Of a DNA stretch of 64,000 nt, positions 87-58,880 are shown one piece after another. The translations under genes and the position numbers were made by a program. The DNA is from Dendrobates tinctorius (Eukaryota). Under the pieces are notes generated by a model. It saw nothing but the letters and a program-made list of their open reading frames with translations. It did no database searches and had not been told where the DNA came from. Each line of letters opens with the position of its first letter. The stretch's first letter is position 1. The DNA lies in NCBI RefSeq assembly GCF_039654945.1, contig NW_027361802.1:9486001-9550000 (forward strand), given 5' to 3'.

Positions 87-250
87 NNNNNNNNNNNNNN
101 NNNNNNNNNNNNNNNNNNNNNNNNNNNNNNNNNNNNNNNNNNNNNNNNNNNNNNNNNNNNNNNNNNNNNNNNNNNNNNNNNNNNNNNNNNNNNNNNNNNN
201 NNNNNNNNNNNNNNNNNNNNNNNNNNNNNNNNNNNNNNNNNNNNNNNNNN
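87..250. other. Assembly gap (others at 6678-6835, 18441-18575, 48199-48339)
   Basis: Runs of N. Confidence 1.
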
Positions 251-6543: not shown

Positions 6544-7079
6544 GATATTTTTTCAGTTGTTTCACACTTTTTTGTTAATTATAAAATTCCACATGTGTTA
6601 ATTCATAGTTTTGATGCCTTCAGAGTGAATCTACAATTTTCATAGTCATGAAAATAAAGAAAACTCTTTGAACGAGANNNNNNNNNNNNNNNNNNNNNNN
6701 NNNNNNNNNNNNNNNNNNNNNNNNNNNNNNNNNNNNNNNNNNNNNNNNNNNNNNNNNNNNNNNNNNNNNNNNNNNNNNNNNNNNNNNNNNNNNNNNNNNN
6801 NNNNNNNNNNNNNNNNNNNNNNNNNNNNNNNNNNNAAAGCATCTTTCATTTTACCAGAGCTGTTCAAAAGAAGCTGAGCTGTGATTGATTGCTATGAGCA
6901 AGTTTTCCCACTTAACAACACCTCAGTAGACACTGACATGGTGGGAGAAATCTAGCATCCCCAGGAACATAAGCTCCCAGCCATTGCCTGCCCCCCTGAA
7001 AGGAGCAGAAAGCACATGACAGAAAAGAATCCCCCCCCGCCTATACCCTCATCACACATCCCCCCATCCCGTAGGTACA

Positions 7080-14978: not shown

Positions 14979-15196
14979 TTAATGTTCTGCTGGGTAACAA
15001 TCACAGACCGTTTCATCTAACAGAGAGAAAAACAAATAAAAAAAAAAAATCACACCACATTATTATATCACTGATTAACAAAACGAGCTTATACCCTGCC
15101 AGATGTCTGACATTTGTTATAGGCCTATAATATATACATGCACAAGGAATCAGAAGGGTCAAGAACACTACATAAAAGAGTTTCATCATTGACTTT

Positions 15197-15593
15197 GTGC
15201 AAATTGTCTCTTCAGACAGTAAAAATGACTAGAACTCTAGTGCCACCTATTGGAAGTAGCAATCCTAACAGTCAATGTCGACCCTTTAACGAGCCTTGTT
15301 ACATGACTTAAGATAAAAGCCAAACCAGAATTTCAATTTGCAGACACTGTGTTTCGGGGTACTGCCCCTCGTCAGTGCAAAGTGTGAGATCTGGTTTGGC
15401 TGTGCAAAAGGTGTCTGACAGATATCCAAGAAGGATTGCTACTTCCAATAGGTGGCACTAGAGTTCTAGTCCTCATACACTCTGAAGAGGCAATTTGCAT
15501 ATTTCCCAGAGGAGCATCGCGGCTTTAAGTCTCCTCATCTCGGCATGCTTAGCATGTCATTCTCCGCAAGGAGAAACAATACTTCTTGGATAT
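15197..15593 (-). mobile_element. Short non-coding hammerhead-carrying repeat (Penelope pLTR-derived or retrozyme-like) with inverted arms
   Basis: Arms ~15197-15266 and ~15432-15500 are inverted; internal hammerhead; a diverged partial copy lies at ~39477-39617; boundaries approximate. Confidence 0.65.
15337..15381 (-). ncRNA. Type I hammerhead ribozyme, canonical core (extended helix I spans 15318-15401)
   Basis: Minus strand reads UUUGCA-CUGACGA-GGGG-CAGUA-CCCC-GAAA-CAC-A-GUG-UC/UGCAAA; all core nucleotides present, GUC cleavage triplet. Confidence 0.88.
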
Positions 15594-16669
15594 CATTTAT
15601 TTTAAAAACTAGTAATAACCAAAACTGTCGTAAAGAGAAGTGTTCACGTATACTCCTTTCCCCAATATTCAATTTCTAAATCGGATATTAAGATTTATGT
15701 CTACAACAGACAACTTGTGTTCTATAAAACAAAGAAACCATTGGGATTACCCATCCAATACACAAGCAACTTTCCCTTACTGGATGATCCTCCTATACGG
15801 GCACACAAAGCAAAGCCAAAATACAGGAGTCCTGTGACTGATCTCAGACACCAGACAAGGAGAGGTTATAAGAGGGCTGGCTGTTACATGCAGCTAGGAG
15901 CAGGTTACACCCCTGATCGGTGACGCAATGTCCCTGCAAGGAGGGGGGGGATCACCAAGGAGCAAAACCAGCGTCACAAATCTCTTGAAAAAATCTTCAT
16001 AATAGTTATCTGCCAAAATACATTATTTTAGTGATCTTATACAATGCATGTTATTTTTTCCTTACATTTGAAAGCACTAGCTAACTACTTGGGCATCTGG
16101 CTGGCTTCTATTATTTTATCATAATTACTCTGAGACCATAATTAATGTCCAAGAGCATAACATGTCATTTTCTTCATTAAACCATGTGCAATTATTAATA
16201 ACTGATGAGGAGCCAGCATTGTATAACCTAGGAAATTTTACCTTATAAGAAGTTCTGATGTCTGTAGGAGCAACACACAGATCTTCAAAAATCCTAGTCG
16301 AAAAAGCGAGTCACCAAAGCCCGATACTTAATACAATTAATAGAATTGTTGCCATGTAATATAGAAGCAAGACCAACACAAGGTCCAAGTTTCCCAATAA
16401 AGGGACTGTCCGCACAAAATGACTTTTCAGACAAAATAGAGGTGCTCAATGCATCATGATGGCGCCAATTACTGGCATACACCTTAACAACTACTTGTTT
16501 TCTATCACTGCCGTTTTCTGGCTCTATGAAGCCAGAGCTGTCAATCAAGGAAGAAGGGGGTGGAGATTGAGGGAAAACAGGCCAACGCTACACTGAGCGC
16601 CTGTCCTTGGTTTCAGCAGTCATTCTGTGCTGACAGTCTCTTAAGAAAAGGCAAAAGAAGGGTGCATAC

Positions 16670-17996: not shown

Positions 17997-18966
17997 TGTC
18001 AACATGATTTACTGTTTAAAAATAGAAACAGAAATACATTCCATACATTAAGTATCACGTGATGCACACAAATAGAAAAATTAGGTGGAACGAAAATTAC
18101 ATAGCAGGTTACGTCAAATAAGCTTATATAAAGTCTTGAACTGTAGAGATTGTTGAACAAAGACACATAATGCGTAATCCTTCCGCGAAGATATATGTGA
18201 GATATGGTATTAAGGAAAAAAACAACCATACGATGCTCAGTAAAAGTAAAGTTGAAGTGAAGCTCCTTTGCAATAGAGTAAAGTAGAGTATAGTTAGACC
18301 ACATATTATAATCCAGTACAATATATTCATTTATTTATAATATATGTGCACTACCCATTTGTTTAAAAGGAAAAAATAAGAGGTAAAGGGCTTTAAACTC
18401 CCTATAATTACCTGACCTGGATGCTGCTTTGAAAGTTATANNNNNNNNNNNNNNNNNNNNNNNNNNNNNNNNNNNNNNNNNNNNNNNNNNNNNNNNNNNN
18501 NNNNNNNNNNNNNNNNNNNNNNNNNNNNNNNNNNNNNNNNNNNNNNNNNNNNNNNNNNNNNNNNNNNNNNNNNNNCCTTTCCTCCTAGGAGGACCAGCAT
18601 GTTCAAACCATATATGATATAGGCACTAAATACAATCCTCTGACACATATTGCACACAATACCTTGGAGCACTTGTATCCTTTATTCTACTGCAGAGGGG
18701 CTTCACTTCAACTTTACTTTTACTGAGCATAGTATGGTTGGTTTTCTCCTTAATACCATATCTCACATATATCTTCGCGGAAGGATTACGCATTATGTGT
18801 CTTTGTTCAACAATCTCTACAGTTCAAGACTTTATATAAGCTTATTCGACGTAACCTGCTATGTAATTTTCGTTCCACCTAATTTTTCTATTTGTGTGCA
18901 TCACGTGATACTTAATGTATGGAATGTATTTCTGTTTCTATTTTTAAACAGTAAATCATGTTGTCA

Positions 18967-39285: not shown

Positions 39286-39476
39286 CTGTGGAAGAAACAT
39301 TACATATCAGTCACAACTCGAAGGTCTTTAGAGTGGCCAAAACAATGTTCCTGTAATGCAGCTTCTAAATAAAAGCGCCAACGTGAACGGAATATCTTGA
39401 AAACATGAAAACTCACAATTAAACAACGTTCAAACTGTTGTGATCGAACACAGTCATCAGTTCAGAGCCTCACTTA

Positions 39477-39556
39477 GACAAATCAGATCTCATACTTTGT
39501 ACTGATGAGGGGTAACACCTTGAAACATTGTCTGTAAATTGAGATTCTGGTTTGTC
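39477..39556 (+). ncRNA. Type I hammerhead ribozyme, diverged copy of the 15.3-kb motif
   Basis: UUUGUA-CUGAUGA-GGGG-UAACA-CCUU-GAAA-CA-U-UG-UC/UGUAAA; outer helix GACAAAUCAGA / UCUGGUUUGUC. Confidence 0.72.
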
Positions 39557-40099
39557 AATCTTGAATTTTAGGATTGCCACTTCCAATAGCTGGCGCTAGA
39601 ATTCTAGTCTTCCTCTTCGATGTAGTGGAAAAGGCTCACATTTTGTGCTCGACAACCTCATGCTTGTGCTGCAAGTCTAGTGAAGCTTTTTTTTTTTTTT
39701 ATCAAGCTAAAACAGCTACATTTTACTTCAATTATGGAAAAAATCTGATCACAAAAAACCATAATGTCAATAAACCCTAACATTTACTGTGTATTTCCAC
39801 AGTGCCCGGCATCCCTCACTTTTGGCCTTATAGAGAAAAGCTATAGAAAAGTGTGGCGAAAAGGTTTAAAAAAAAAAAAAAAAAAAAGCTAAGGACTTCA
39901 TAAGATTTTAGTTGTTTGCAATGGATTATTTTGCTGCTGATCATGCGTGATGGATTTGATTAAAGAAACAAATACCAGAAACATTTTAGTAAATGACTAT
40001 GAGACCATAATAGACCCTAAATGTATCAGAAAATATATAGTCACTCCTTGCAACATAGGAATAATGGAGAACAAAATGAAGTTTTAAGACTAAAAGGGG

Positions 40100-47400: not shown

Positions 47401-50400
47401 AAAAGGTGCGCTCTAGAAAAAAAAAAATACTAAAATTAGCTTCCTGGACAACCCATTACCAATGGCCCCAGAATGCTGTATAAACGGGAAAAAAAAAAAA
47501 AAAAAAATCTATACTTACCCCCTGAATCGGCGCAAATCCTCTGCTTTCAGCCCTTTATCATTCACCAGTCAAATGACCGCTGCAGCTAATCAGTAACTGC
47601 TACTTCCAAATTTTGTCTAGGATTGCATTCACATACAGTGGCATGTAAAAGTTTAGGTACCCCTGGTCAAAATTACTGTTAGTGTGAACACTTAACCAAG
47701 TTGAAGATGAAATAATCTCTAAAAGGGCTTAAGTTAACCCCTTTCTGACATCATACTATCCCATCCATGGGACCCGGGCCCCTATGCCCATGGACGGGAT
47801 AGTATGTCTAGCGTGGTGAGCGCCGCTGATCGCGGCCAGGTGTCAGCTGATTATCACAGCTGACACCCAGCACTATGTCAACCCCTTGTTAACATGATCG
47901 CGGTGTACCGGGGGATAAAGGGAAGCATTGGCAGGGAGAGGGCCCCCTCCGTGCCTCCCTGAGCCCCCCACAGCAGCACAATGTGCAGCCCTGCTGCGGG
48001 GGTCTTTCTCTACAGGTCCCCGGATCCAAGATGGCGACGGGGACCTTAAGGGGCCTGTAGGGAGCTGGCTTCCTCAGTGCATGCAAAGCGCAGGCAAGCG
48101 GAAGTCTTCTTCAATGCCTGTGACAGATCGCTGATCTGTCACAGTGATCTGTGATGTGCCAGATCAACGATCTGTCACAGGACAGTGATGACCCCCCTNN
48201 NNNNNNNNNNNNNNNNNNNNNNNNNNNNNNNNNNNNNNNNNNNNNNNNNNNNNNNNNNNNNNNNNNNNNNNNNNNNNNNNNNNNNNNNNNNNNNNNNNNN
48301 NNNNNNNNNNNNNNNNNNNNNNNNNNNNNNNNNNNNNNNATTTTTTGGAAATTAAAAAAAAACCAAAACAATAAAAGTACACATTTAGTATCGCCACGTC
48401 CGTAACAACCTGCCCTATAAAACTGTCTCATTAGCGAACCCCATAAAAAATAAAAAACGAAGCAAAAAATAATGATTTAATATCATACCGCCGAACAAAA
48501 AGTGCAATAACGCGCGATCAAAAAGACGCATATAAATATCCATGGTACCGCAGAAAACGTCATCTTGTCCCGCAAAAAACAAGCCATCATACAGCATCAT
48601 CAGCGAAAAAATAAAAAAAGTTATAGCTCGCAGAATAAAGCGATGCAAAAATAATTTTTTATATAAAATTGTTTTTATTGCATAAAAGTGCCAAAACATA
48701 AAAAAAGACATAAATGAGGTCAGGGCTGTGGAGTCGGAGTCAGTTTTGGTTGGAGTCGGAGTCGGTAGAAATGTACCGACTCCAGCTTTAAAAAAAATGT
48801 ATTAATATTTCATAATTGAACTTTCATATGAATTTTATAAATGTTACTCAAATATATATGTTCTATCAAACTATGAACAACAGTGATAAGCAGTTCTGCT
48901 GGAGATAGAGACATTTCTTACTTCTTGTGTGTCACTGTTCTCCACTGCCCTTATCTAATCTTATACTTTGTTAACCTCATGCTGCCCCAACCCCCCTACT
49001 TACAATGTATGAAACTGAAAGTGAAAATGTGTTGCAAATTCTTAGTAGTAAAGCTCCTCCTCTAGACTAGATCATACTAGGTGTGTGTCTTCCAAGCATC
49101 TCACAGCTGCCTGCTACTCAGAAGAGGAAGACTGTAAGAAGTATTATCCTTTCAACAAACTTTGCATCAGTTAACTGTGAGTACATGAGGAATAATAACA
49201 GTATTACTGACCACTATATCAGTTGTACGACCTGGCAATAATTTTGTACAATTGTTTTTAGGAAAAACAATTGTCATTTGGATTGTGAATGCAGAATTAA
49301 AAACCTGAGAATGTCAAAGAAGCATCACATTAAATCAGCTGTATTTGAACATTTCACCATCACTCAAGATAGAAAACATTATGTCTGTCAGTGTATGACA
49401 AATGATCCAGATGAAAACAAATGCTGCGAAGCCAAGATGAGTGCATATTCAGGCAAAGATAAAAATGCTCCTACCAGAGCTTCTAATCTAAAGAGACATT
49501 TACAGCGCTTTCATCCAGAAGTACTGAAAGCAGTGGATGAGAAAGACTGCATCCAAACCAATGAACCAGTGCCCAGCTCTTCCAGCCAAACAAAGGAGCA
49601 GAGAACTTTGCAGCCATCAGTTGCAAGATATTTTGTCAGTGACAAAGTTACTGTGACAATGACAGTAGATACATTTAAAAAACAGATCATAGAGCTTGTT
49701 GTAAAGGATAGTGTGCCTATTTCATTATTTTCACGACCAGCTTTTGTGTGTCTGAATGGGGAAATGGCCCGCAAGCTTGGTGTTTCTCTGGAGAGAGAGA
49801 GTATTAGAAAATTAGTAATCGAAGAAGCTTTTAAACAAAAGAAAGAACTTAAAAAAAACTCTCAAGGGACGCTTTCTGTTTCTTAAAATGGATGCCTGCA
49901 CACGTCACAGAGTGAACTATTTTGCCATCAATGTCTGATTTGTTTGTGACAAAAATGAAATAGTTACCAAGACATTGGCAGTAAAAGACACCAAAGCTCA
50001 TCACACCAGTGAGTTTCTCCAGGTCTTGGTGGAAAAGGTTCTGCAAGACTATGAACTTAAAAAAGAGCAAGTTCTTTCTGTCGTAACTGACAATGCTTCA
50101 AATATGATAAGTACTATTAAGCTAATGAATGAGAGTAATGATGGTGACCAGCAGCTAGAAGAACATTCTGGGTCCACAGACACAGAAATGTTTGAAATAG
50201 AGGAACACAGTATTGTAACTGAGGAGCAAACTGAAGTTGCTTCAGATGAACAGCAACATGATAGTTTAGATCAGGGGTCCTCAAACTACGGCCCGCGGGC
50301 CACATGCGGCCCGCCAAGGACTTTTATCCGGCCCCCGCCAGGCCGATATTGAACTTATGAACTGCACTGCAGTTCAATGCCGGCGGGCCCTGTAATCGCG

Positions 50401-57193: not shown

Positions 57194-58003
57194 CAGGGGG
57201 GAAACAGGCCCGAGAGTGGAGTGGAGGGGGGCGGGGAAACAGGCCCGAGAGTGGAGTGGAGGGGGGCGGGGAAACAGGCCCGAGAGTGGAGTGGAGGGGG
57301 GCGGGGAAACAGGCCCGAGAGTGGAGTGGAGGGGGGGGGGGACGGGGAAACAGGCCCGAGAGTGGAGGGGGGTGGGCGGGGAAACAGGCCCGAGAGTGGA
57401 GGGGGGTGGGCGGGGAAACAGGCCCGAGAGTGGAGGGGGGTGGGCGGGGAAACAGGCCCGAGAGTGGAGGGGGGTGGGCGGGGAAACAGGCCCGAGAGTG
57501 GAGGGGGGTGGGCGGGGAAACAGGCCCGAGAGTGGAGGGGGGTGGGCGGGGAAACAGGCCCGAGAGTGGAGGGGGGTGGGCGGGGAAACAGGCCCGAGAG
57601 TGGAGGGGGGTGGGCGGGGAAACAGGCCCGAGAGTGGAGGGGGGTGGGCGGGGAAACAGGCCCGAGAGTGGAGTGGAGGGGGGGGCGGGGAAACAGGCCC
57701 GAGAGTGGAGTGGAGGGGGGGGCGGGGAAACAAGCCCGAGAGTGGACGGGGGGGGGGGCAGGGAAACAGGCCCGAGAGTGGACGGGGGGGGGCAGGGAAA
57801 CAGGCCCGAGAGTGGACGGGGGGGGGCAGGGAAACAGGCCCGAGAGTGGACGGGGGGGGGCAGGGAAACAGGCCCGAGAGTGGACGGGGGGGGGGGCAGG
57901 GAAATAGGCCCGAGAGTGGACGGGGGGGGGGGGCAGGGAAACAGGCCCGAGAGTGGACGGGGGGGGGCAGGGAAACAGGCCTGAGAGTGGACGGGGGGGG
58001 GCA
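57194..58003. repeat. G-rich ~32-35-bp minisatellite in PTAR1 intron 1
   Basis: ggggaaacaggcccgagagtgga(g/c)gggggg..gc, about 24 copies. Confidence 0.93.
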
Positions 58004-58289: not shown

Positions 58290-58880
58290 CTGTTGGCGGG
58301 GGCACGTGCCATCTGCCGTTGCCATGGACACGACACTACACACAGCTCAGGTATGGACAGCGCGGTTACTACAGGACAGGACTCAAACTTTCTAAACTCC
58401 AGCGGCGCCGCCACATACGGGATACACGAGCGACGTCACGACCCCCTCAGTGACGTCACCGCCCCCACTACTCACATGTTGGGGTTCCTGCGGAAAGCAC
58501 CAGTGATGTCCTTCACCACCCGCTGGACGAGCACCTCCACCTCCTCCTTCCACTCCGCCATGTCCGCGGCTACAGGCGGAGACTCATGCGCTTCCGGGTC
58601 AGCGTGCCACTCCTCCGGTGCCGGGTGTACAGCGCCGTCCTCGGTGACCGTGCGTGCTGCCGAGTGTAGCGCTGTGCGCTTGTGGACGTGTTCTGCTGCT
58701 GCATAGGGCTCCACTCTGGGTCAGGCCCCGACGGCTGCAGACGTTATGTGAGGGCACACCAGGGGCCGCCAGAGGGCGCTCCCCACAATAAGGGAGACCA
58801 GCTTCTGTGGATCCCGTCCTGCCGCACTGACTAGAAAGCCTCAGTGTGCGATGCTTGTCTTGGCTTCCTACACGGCAGGG
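58290..58880 (-). promoter_or_regulatory. CpG-rich PTAR1 promoter / exon 1 region
   Basis: High GC and CpG density against an AT-rich background; ETS-type CCGGAAG (minus, 58591-58597); perfect CRE TGACGTCA at 58451-58458 with adjacent GC box; CTCF-like GGCCGCCAGAGGGCGCT at 58764-58780. Confidence 0.7.
58476..58561 (-). CDS. PTAR1: PTAR1 coding exon 1 (86 nt), MAEWKEEVEVLVQRVVKDITGAFRRNPN(I)
   Basis: ATG at 58561-58559 in strong Kozak context (gacATGG); donor AT|GTGAGT at 58475; peptide matches the vertebrate PTAR1 N-terminus as recalled; lies in a CpG-rich region. Confidence 0.95.

What the first reader, a model, noticed from the sequence alone, without database searches (positions are those of the whole stretch)
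15318..15401. Canonical hammerhead ribozyme on the sense strand of PTAR1 intron 3
Seen: the minus strand has a complete type I core (CUGACGA...GAAA...GUC), a 6-bp helix I, a 4-bp GC helix II and a short helix III. A distal 12-bp extension (AGCCAAACCAGA / UCUGGUUUGGCU) lies beyond an internal loop. Known: natural fast hammerheads use a helix I bulge to loop II contact, and amphibian genomes carry hammerheads in satellite 2, retrozymes and Penelope-like elements. Inference: PTAR1 pre-mRNA could self-cleave between 15343 and 15342, between exons 3 and 4, affecting splicing or transcript yield.
Basis: partly seen in the sequence, partly recalled or inferred. Interest (0 to 1): 0.8.

Follow-up and report, generated by a model that had tools for sequence, protein, structure and literature searches.

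The report
Repeat-borne hammerhead motif in PTAR1 intron
The hammerhead ribozyme motif is real, but it belongs to one copy of a mobile repeat present in tens of thousands of copies in this frog genome, and nothing suggests it regulates the PTAR1 gene it landed in.

Summary
The minus strand 15401->15318 carries a complete type I hammerhead: CUGACGA, GAAA and GUC, a 6-bp helix I, a 4-bp G-C helix II, a 3-bp helix III with a triloop, and a 12-bp distal stem. The predicted cut lies between 15343 and 15342. A descriptor scan found two such motifs in the window and none in 200 shuffles. Rfam Hammerhead_1 matches end to end at 25.5 bits, below its gathering score of 34.

Laid contigs show that 15198-15599 is a very abundant interspersed repeat. 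Its summed word depth is about 2-4x10^5, against about 5 in the unique flanks. It is shared by several organisms and also sits in runs guessed to be RNA.

The locus is a fold-back insert. One partial unit carries the hammerhead. An inverted, 5'-truncated unit without a hammerhead abuts its 5' end, which is the architecture described for Penelope-like elements and retrozymes. Helix III is unstable alone, the nearest-neighbour model favours an inactive fold, and no sense-strand partner lies nearby. Published amphibian motifs of this type cut poorly as monomers.

I conclude this is a solo retroelement copy, incidental to PTAR1. Cleavage was not testable here.

The scan has already logged many hammerhead units elsewhere in this genome (266 notes).

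The parts
15318..15401 (-). Hammerhead hairpin: 12-bp distal stem, asymmetric internal loop (8 nt / 7 nt), and the type I hammerhead.
   Evidence: Read directly. Inverted repeat I5. Descriptor hit. The family-wide G-C/A-U alternation at pair 15325/15394 suggests covariation (table 3).
15337..15381 (-). Minimal hammerhead: helix I 6 bp, CUGACGA, helix II GGGG/CCCC with loop CAGUA, GAAA, helix III ACA/UGU with loop CAG, C17.
   Evidence: Rfam RF00163 full-length match, 25.5 bits, E 7.7e-05. Descriptor scan.
15342..15343 (-). Predicted cleavage site: 3' of C17 (15343), before U1.1 (15342).
   Evidence: Position follows from the core numbering. No cleavage data exist.
15402..15431 (-). Family segment upstream of the hammerhead (TCTTGGATATCTGTCAGACACCTTTTGCAC). 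Its start repeats the end of the unit's tail.
   Evidence: Loose-end consensus at 15404 (table 7). Inverted repeat I3, 15421-15443 with 15572-15594. Depth is only about 1.2x10^4, against 2-3x10^5 beside it.
15198..15317 (-). Rest of the hammerhead-bearing partial unit (L): spacer 15317->15267, arm 15266->15227, and the start of the tail 15226->15198, which ends inside the octamer.
   Evidence: Homology to copy 2. Contig pieces spanning 15198/15227 to 15401 (table 8). Depth falls to about 5-8 left of 15192.
15432..15594 (+). Inverted, 5'-truncated partial unit (R): arm plus tail, no hammerhead, abutting the 5' end of L.
   Evidence: The 40-nt arm is 100% complementary to 15227-15266, and the similarity runs 69 nt at 90%. 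Most family contigs carry the spacer, not this junction, left of 15432 (table 7). Depth falls to about 5-9 from 15600.
39476..39610 (+). Second, older copy of the same family: an 82-nt hammerhead hairpin plus arm, with a 39-nt gap in the spacer. It lies antisense to the gene.
   Evidence: BLAST at 81-88%. Alignments. Descriptor hit with helix III reduced to 2 bp.
58476..58561 (-). Context: coding start of exon 1 of the host gene (ATG 58561, donor GT 58475). It fixes the gene's strand as minus.
   Evidence: ORF list and sequence. The name PTAR1 rests on my recollection of the N-terminal peptide and on scan note s1-369721, and was not tested.

Best explanation
15318-15401 (-) is the hammerhead of one solo copy of a very abundant, non-coding, roughly 317-nt retroelement unit. 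The unit is of the amphibian satellite-2, non-LTR retrozyme, or Penelope-like pLTR kind.

In such elements the ribozyme serves the element itself. It cuts multimeric element transcripts into unit-length RNAs, usually acting as a dimer because helix III is too weak alone.

Here a partial unit with the hammerhead (15431->15198, minus strand) was inserted together with an inverted, 5'-truncated partial unit (15432->15594, plus strand). That gives a roughly 400-bp fold-back insert in an intron of the host gene.

The motif is transcribed only as a passenger of the pre-mRNA. As an isolated monomer it is expected to cut weakly or not at all, and it has no demonstrated role for PTAR1.

Shown: the motif, the repeat nature, the fold-back architecture and the strand. 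Inferred: the retroelement class, the mode of insertion and the low activity.
For: - Motif: complete and far beyond chance.
- Repeat nature: 13,716 contigs of run X1 lie on 15198-15599. Summed word depth is 1.2x10^4 to 3.8x10^5, against about 5 in the flanks 15072-15191 and 15600-15700. The picture is the same in X5 (another organism label) and in the runs guessed to be RNA, X15 and X20.
- Spread: parts of the element are held by runs of at least six organism labels.
- Second copy: a diverged copy lies in the window on the opposite strand.
- Family variation (table 3) fits a hammerhead. The free core position N7 (15371) is split about 50:50 between C and U. Pair 15325/15394 alternates G-C and A-U, which suggests covariation (frequencies only, not linked in single contigs). 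No essential core position is listed as varying in 10% or more of contigs.
- Unit permutation: loose-end consensus shows the tail end (..TTGGAT) running into the segment upstream of the hammerhead (table 7; I3). This implies a tandem or circularly permuted unit. Summed from the window pieces it is 19+84+51+40+123 = 317 nt.
- Architecture: an inverted 5'-truncated copy adjacent to the 5' end is the insertion structure described for Penelope-like elements (PMC8557442).
- Literature on the motif type: metazoan type I hammerheads have a 6-bp helix I, a 4-bp helix II and a weak palindromic helix III, and work as dimers (PMC4209133).
- Literature on activity: amphibian motifs cut poorly as monomers (PMC7229834, PMC7761336), and only 1 of 9 Xenopus dimer constructs cut in vitro (bioRxiv 10.64898/2026.07.22.740005).
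- Literature on frog repeats: Xenopus carries repeat-associated hammerheads (PMC3088659), and 43.9% of X. tropicalis retrozymes overlap introns (same preprint).
- Folding: helix III alone has no stable fold. The 45-nt hammerhead fold scores -7.8 kcal/mol, against -13.6 for an alternative that pairs GCACUG with CAGUGU. In the 84-nt hairpin the hammerhead helices make up about 0.03% of the ensemble.
Against: - Tertiary contacts: the nearest-neighbour model ignores the loop-loop contacts that stabilise real hammerheads. A 3-bp helix III is slightly better than the 1-2 bp typical of amphibian motifs, so some monomeric cleavage is possible. An axolotl monomer reached 22% in 1 h (PMC7229834).
- Depth: all runs were contigs, so summed depth is not a copy number, and RNA ends could not be seen.
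- RNA status: the 'RNA' label of X15 and X20 is a guess by the tool.
- Family identity: it was not matched to a named, catalogued element.
- Target-site duplication: none was resolved.
- Arm identity: the 40-nt arms are 100% identical while the outer 29 nt differ at about 5 positions. I do not fully explain this.
Confidence: 0.85

Rival explanations
1. Exapted intronic ribozyme. The hammerhead cuts nascent PTAR1 pre-mRNA in intron 3 and thereby tunes splicing or transcript yield, like the conserved HH9/HH10 intronic hammerheads of amniotes.
For: - The motif is complete and lies on the transcribed strand of the intron.
- HH9 and HH10 are thought to descend from just such amphibian repeat-borne hammerheads (PMC3088659).
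- This copy's hammerhead region shows only one position where nearly all family contigs read a different letter (15332).
Against: - It is one of a huge number of near-identical copies, so an intact core is explained by youth or family origin, not by selection at this locus.
- Helix III is weak, an inactive fold competes, and there is no cis partner.
- There is no RNA depth on the unique flanks in the runs guessed to be RNA.
- Retrozymes are reported as depleted from introns, which suggests a cost rather than a use (bioRxiv 10.64898/2026.07.22.740005).
Confidence: 0.04
2. Active but inconsequential. The solo hammerhead does cut a measurable fraction of intron RNA, as a monomer or in trans with abundant family transcripts. 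Because the cut falls in an intron that is removed and degraded anyway, it has no phenotype.
For: - The core is complete, with G10.1-C11.1 and A15.1-U16.1 in place and a 3-bp helix III.
- Axolotl monomers cut at a low rate (PMC7229834).
- Family RNA may be plentiful: contigs in runs guessed to be RNA hold the element.
- Helix III (ACACAGUGU) is a near-palindrome that could pair between two molecules (read directly).
Against: - The modelled fold is mostly inactive.
- 8 of 9 Xenopus dimer constructs did not cut (bioRxiv 10.64898/2026.07.22.740005).
- The 40+24-bp arms lock the region into a roughly 300-nt rod, which may hinder pairing in trans.
Confidence: 0.1
3. A DNA transposon (MITE) whose terminal inverted repeats are the 15198-15266 and 15432-15499 arms and which happens to carry a hammerhead inside.
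For: - A roughly 300-bp palindrome with 40-nt perfect arms.
- A rod-like fold at -155 kcal/mol.
Against: - The repeat continues about 100 bp beyond the right arm to 15594-15599 at full depth.
- Most family contigs have the spacer, not the inverted junction, left of 15432, and depth drops about 20-fold across 15408-15431.
- Copy 2 has one arm only.
- The outermost ends are the least alike part of the arms, the opposite of what terminal inverted repeats show.
Confidence: 0.01

Closest known systems
Amphibian satellite-2 / non-LTR retrozyme hammerheads (newts, axolotl; Xenopus families in bioRxiv 10.64898/2026.07.22.740005)
   Same: - Type I motif with a 6-bp helix I, a 4-bp helix II and a weak near-palindromic helix III.
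- A unit of about 320 nt, inferred.
- Very high copy number.
- The family is present in runs guessed to be RNA.
- Solo 'monomer' copies scattered through the genome, including in introns.
   Different: - At this locus there is no tandem array: one hammerhead only, in a fold-back with an inverted partial unit.
- Helix III is 3 bp with a triloop rather than 1-2 bp with a tetraloop.
- Circular RNA and cleavage have not been shown for this family.
Penelope-like element pLTR hammerheads and PLE insertion architecture (PMC4209133, PMC8557442)
   Same: - An inverted 5'-truncated copy directly adjacent to the 5' end, forming inverted repeats.
- The hammerhead lies in the non-coding repeat.
- Variable truncation points.
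   Different: - No reverse transcriptase or GIY-YIG ORF lies at or next to the insert, so it would have to be non-autonomous.
- The motif is a 'canonical' type I with a helix III, not the minimal PLE variant.
- The 30-40-bp 'tail' and the target duplication were not resolved.
Conserved intronic hammerheads HH9 (RECK) and HH10 (C10orf118) of amniotes
   Same: - Type I hammerhead on the sense strand of an intron.
- Extended helix I with an internal loop.
- Said to resemble Xenopus repeat-borne hammerheads (PMC3088659).
   Different: - HH9 and HH10 are single-copy and conserved at orthologous positions across many species, and they cut as monomers.
- This one is a copy of a mass repeat with a weak helix III, and no conservation data exist for it.
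Rfam Hammerhead_1 (RF00163)
   Same: Full-length alignment to the 45-position model, including CUGAcGAG and CGAAAC.
   Different: - The score of 25.5 bits is below the gathering score of 34.
- There is one extra base in the helix III loop, and helix I has a different sequence.

Membership tests
Hammerhead ribozyme, type I | Conserved core: C3 U4 G5 A6 N7 G8 A9, G12 A13 A14, and N17 not G, preceded by U16.1. | tested here: met
   CUGACGA (15375-15369), GAAA (15355-15352), GUC ending at C17 = 15343.
Hammerhead ribozyme, type I | Three helices around the core, with II and III capped and I open. G10.1-C11.1 and A15.1-U16.1 close helices II and III. | tested here: met
   Helix I is 6 bp, helix II is 4 bp G-C, helix III is 3 bp with a triloop. 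Helix III is not stable on its own.
Hammerhead ribozyme, type I | Reaches the curated Rfam score for RF00163. | tested here: not met
   25.5 bits against a gathering score of 34. E 7.7e-05 in a 71-nt search. No hit in the 64-kb and 521-nt searches.
Hammerhead ribozyme, type I | Mg-dependent self-cleavage 3' of N17, giving 2',3'-cyclic phosphate and 5'-OH ends. | not testable with these tools
   All runs available were contigs, which show no RNA ends.
Non-LTR retrozyme / amphibian satellite 2 | Head-to-tail units of 150-450 bp, each with a hammerhead. | tested here: not met
   At this locus there is a single hammerhead and no direct repeat. For the family, a permuted or tandem unit of about 317 nt is only inferred from loose-end consensus.
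Non-LTR retrozyme / amphibian satellite 2 | Abundant linear and circular unit-length RNA. | tested here: inconclusive
   Contigs of runs guessed to be RNA (X15, X20 and others) hold the element. The run kind is a guess, and circularity cannot be seen.
Penelope-like element insertion | An inverted 5'-truncated copy adjacent to the 5' end, forming inverted repeats. | tested here: met
   R (15432-15594, +) begins at the arm and lacks the hammerhead and spacer. It abuts L's 5' end. Description in PMC8557442.
Penelope-like element insertion | RT plus GIY-YIG ORF between pLTRs (autonomous element). | not tested
   The repeat signal ends at 15198 and 15599, so the roughly 400-bp insert has no room for such an ORF. 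The rest of the window was not screened for PLE ORFs.
Exapted intronic hammerhead (HH9/HH10 kind) | Single-copy locus conserved at the orthologous position across species. | tested here: not met
   It is a member of a mass repeat. Orthologous introns of other species were not available, so conservation of the insertion itself is untested.
Exapted intronic hammerhead (HH9/HH10 kind) | A stable fold that cuts as a monomer. | tested here: inconclusive
   The thermodynamic model disfavours the active fold, but it ignores tertiary contacts.

The most novel reading that the evidence does not exclude
This particular copy, held at the tip of a roughly 70-bp double-stranded stem made by the fold-back insertion, is a young example of a retroelement hammerhead being captured as an intronic self-cleaving switch in a frog gene. 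It would be a living intermediate on the road that gave amniotes HH9 and HH10.
Probability: 0.03. Interest if true: 0.6.

Novelty: already known. Interest (0 to 1): 0.12.

Why it matters
As it stands, this is an ordinary annotation: a retroelement-borne hammerhead of a kind reported by the thousand in frog and salamander genomes, including in introns.

Three points are useful beyond that:
- It is a caution that an intact hammerhead in an amphibian intron is the default expectation, not a sign of gene regulation.
- It is a clean example of the Penelope-type fold-back insertion around a non-coding hammerhead unit.
- Rfam's fast filters missed a full-length hammerhead match in the whole-window scan, so such copies are probably under-counted by routine annotation.

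Tried and rejected
- Rfam at gathering threshold on the whole window, and at E<=10 on 521 nt: no hammerhead hit. The hit appeared only on 71 nt.
- Chance motif: rejected, 0 hits in 200 shuffles.
- MITE reading: rejected on the depth profile, the loose ends and copy 2.
In the 302-nt and 501-nt folds the arms pair with each other and leave the 84-nt hairpin folded as it is alone. The competitor is local, pairing GCACUG with CAGUGU.
- Two-copy covariation count. 98% of cells are paired, with one double change and five one-sided changes to G-U. With two sequences this is indistinguishable from shuffles, 253/500.
- Copy 2's helix III in that alignment is an artefact of gap placement. Its real form is 2 bp with an AUU loop.
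- Target-site duplication: only an ambiguous ATCATT is shared by both sides, so it is not claimed.
- Primary papers on Xenopus intronic hammerheads (RNA 2010, EMBO Rep 2010, RNA 2011 and 2012) are not held in the library.
- The Perreault Dataset S1 alignments are not held.
- The primers in the 2026 preprint's supplement target genomic flanks, and I saw no obvious match to this element by eye. No formal comparison was run.
- Search of the scan's findings by sequence: blank.
- I did not fill or look up the masked N blocks and did not test the gene's name with a protein search. I did not build any consensus or joined unit of the element.

Full report
**1. The observation**

Read on the minus strand, 15401->15318 is:

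AGCCAAACCAGA / UCUCACAC / UUUGCA / CUGACGA / GGGG-CAGUA-CCCC / GAAA / CA-CAG-UG / UC / UGCAAA / UUGAAAU / UCUGGUUUGGCU

In standard hammerhead numbering:
- C3-A9 lie at 15375-15369, with N7 = C.
- Helix II is four G-C pairs closed by G10.1-C11.1.
- G12-A14 lie at 15355-15353.
- Helix III is A15.1-U16.1, C-G and A-U with a CAG triloop.
- C17 is 15343, and helix I is 6 bp.

The 12-bp distal stem is a perfect inverted repeat (I5).

A descriptor scan I wrote found exactly two motifs in the 64 kb, this one and 39502-39532 on the plus strand. It found none in 200 dinucleotide-preserving shuffles.

Rfam gave nothing at gathering threshold on the whole window, and nothing at E<=10 on 521 nt. On 71 nt, Hammerhead_1 aligned over its whole 45-position model at 25.5 bits, E 7.7e-05, against a gathering score of 34. 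The motif is therefore real and not a chance match, but it is sub-threshold for the curated model. The speed filters hid it in the wider searches.

**2. What surrounds it**

The hairpin sits inside a larger palindrome:
- Arms 15227-15266 and 15432-15471 are 40 nt and 100% complementary.
- Arms 15198-15221 and 15476-15499 are 24 nt and 88% complementary.

The 302 nt fold as one rod at -155 kcal/mol.

Self-BLAST found a second, diverged copy at 39476-39612 in the opposite orientation. It has the hammerhead hairpin and one arm, with a 39-nt gap in the spacer. Its changes are:
- Helix II has two G-U pairs.
- Helix I has two G-U pairs.
- Helix III has lost 2 nt.
- One distal pair changed on both sides, C-G to A-U.

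With two sequences this carries no statistical weight (253 of 500 shuffles do as well).

**3. It is a mass repeat**

Runs of several organism labels hold part of the stretch. I laid the contigs of four runs on 15000-15700 at 80% likeness.

- Depth: the unique flanks (15072-15191 and 15600-15700) have a summed word depth of about 5 in X1. 15198-15599 has 1.2x10^4 to 3.8x10^5, from 13,716 contigs.
- Other runs: X5 (another organism label) looks the same. X15 and X20, which the tool guesses to be RNA, also hold the element but have zero depth on the unique flanks.
- Caveat: summed contig depth is not a copy number, but the contrast of four to five orders of magnitude leaves no doubt.

Loose ends mark recurrent boundaries at 15227, 15404, 15432, 15474, 15504 and 15591.
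- The consensus left of 15432 is the spacer that precedes the arm in the hammerhead-bearing unit.
- The consensus beyond 15404, reverse-complemented, reads ..CTCCTTGGATCCCGGTCAGACGCCTCTCA. This overlaps the end of the tail (..ACTTCTTGGATATC, 15581-15594) and the window's own 15431->15402.
- Hence the tail of one unit runs into the segment upstream of the next hammerhead. The family unit is tandem or circularly permuted.
- Its length summed from the window pieces is 19+84+51+40+123 = 317 nt.

**4. Architecture of this locus**

L is a partial unit on the minus strand, 15431->15198. It consists of the upstream segment, the hammerhead hairpin, the spacer, the arm and the first 29 nt of the tail.

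R is an inverted partial unit on the plus strand, 15432->15594. It consists of arm and tail, is 5'-truncated exactly at the arm, and has no hammerhead.

R abuts the 5' end of L. The junction region 15408-15431 has about 20-fold lower depth than its neighbours, so this junction is not the family norm.

An inverted 5'-truncated copy immediately adjacent to the 5' end, forming inverted repeats, is the structure described for Penelope-like element insertions (PMC8557442). Animal retrozymes have recently been argued to be non-autonomous derivatives of those elements (bioRxiv 10.64898/2026.07.22.740005).

No target duplication could be called.

Two unchecked first-reader notes of this scan describe fold-back retro-inserts with hammerheads elsewhere in this genome (s1-366834, s1-364459). 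In all, 266 notes mention hammerhead ribozymes in it. So the scan has met this kind of element before on other DNA of the same genome.

**5. Family variation**

Among positions where 10% or more of contig depth differs from the window (table 3):
- The only core position is N7 (15371, C or U at about 50% in X1). This is the one core base that is free to vary.
- 15325 and 15394, which pair in the distal stem, alternate between G-C and A-U. These are frequencies, not linked in single contigs.
- 15384 (C/U) and 15348 (A/C) lie in loops.
- At 15332 the window's base is private, and 99% of family depth has the other purine.

None of the 14 essential core or closing positions is listed as variable. 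Given only six or so variable sites in 84 nt, that has a chance probability of about 0.3. Thirteen further rows were not shown. This is compatible with a functional family ribozyme but is not proof of it.

**6. How it most likely works**

In the family, the hammerhead processes multimeric element RNA into units. Published amphibian examples have a helix III too weak for monomeric action and cut efficiently only as dimers (PMC4209133, PMC7229834, PMC7761336).

Here helix III alone has no stable fold. The 45-nt hammerhead fold scores -7.8 kcal/mol, against -13.6 for an alternative in which GCACUG (the end of helix I plus C3-G5) pairs with CAGUGU (loop III plus the 3' strand of helix III). In the 84-nt hairpin the hammerhead helices make up about 0.03% of the ensemble. 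These models ignore tertiary contacts, so they set a bias, not a verdict.

The flanking arms pair with each other and do not invade the core.

No second sense-strand hammerhead exists in the window to form a dimer in cis.

In the 2026 Xenopus study only one of nine dimer constructs cut in vitro.

I therefore expect weak or no cleavage of the intron, with no consequence for the gene. This is inference. Nothing here could measure cleavage, because every run was kept as contigs.

**7. Host gene**

An ORF on the minus strand starts at ATG 58561. It reads MAEWKEEVEVLVQRVVKDITGAFRRNPN and then meets a GTGAGT donor at 58475. From memory I recognise this as the PTAR1 N-terminus. That recollection and scan note s1-369721 are the only bases for the name, and I ran no search.

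The masked blocks at 18441-18575 and 6678-6835 have splice-like flanks on the minus strand and bracket the motif. 'Sense strand of an intron' is therefore reasonable. The intron number is not verified. I did not fill the masked letters.

**8. Comparison and verdict**

The motif works like, and most probably is, a member of the amphibian repeat-borne type I hammerheads (satellite 2, retrozyme, Penelope pLTR). For each family considered:
- Structural definition of a hammerhead: met.
- Curated Rfam score: not met.
- Tandem criterion for a retrozyme: not met at this locus.
- Penelope-type fold-back criterion: met.
- Single-copy criterion for an exapted intronic ribozyme: not met.

It is a known kind of thing in a known kind of place, so interest is low.

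The residual novel reading is a young capture as an intronic switch. I put it at about 3%.

Noticed in passing
window 15494-15501 (+), 15530-15543 (+), and 15198-15205: The repeat's tail carries the octamer ATTTGCAT. The family loose-end consensus reads TATGCAAATTG. About 30 nt further on lies a TCTCCTCATCTCGG stretch that, from memory only, recalls a Xenopus snRNA-type proximal element. Newt satellite 2 is said to use such a promoter. In the R copy it would point rightwards, antisense to the host gene. The L copy is cut off inside the octamer.
   Followed up: no
window 57198-58002: 23 copies of a 34-nt G-rich tandem unit (94% matches) lie just inside intron 1 of the host gene. They produce long spurious ORFs on both strands.
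   Followed up: partly
window 15337-15381 (-): A full-length Rfam Hammerhead_1 match (25.5 bits) is invisible in whole-window and 521-nt cmscan runs and appears only when 71 nt are searched. Routine Rfam scans will therefore miss copies of this family.
   Followed up: yes
window 87-250, 6678-6835, 18441-18575, 48199-48339: Four masked N blocks of 135-164 nt. Those at 18441-18575 and 6678-6835 have splice-acceptor-like flanks on the minus strand (the 18441-18575 block also a donor), so they probably cover most of the host gene's exons. The masks do not coincide exactly with exon ends.
   Followed up: partly
window 39684-39700 and 39867-39890: A T-run (about 14 nt) and an A-run (about 16 nt) lie in inverted orientation 165-175 nt apart, just downstream of the second hammerhead copy. 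Their origin is unexplained.
   Followed up: no
window 15024-15071: A short separate repeat. Summed contig depth is 136-1360 in X1 and X5, against about 5 in the neighbouring unique sequence. It is unrelated to the hammerhead element.
   Followed up: no
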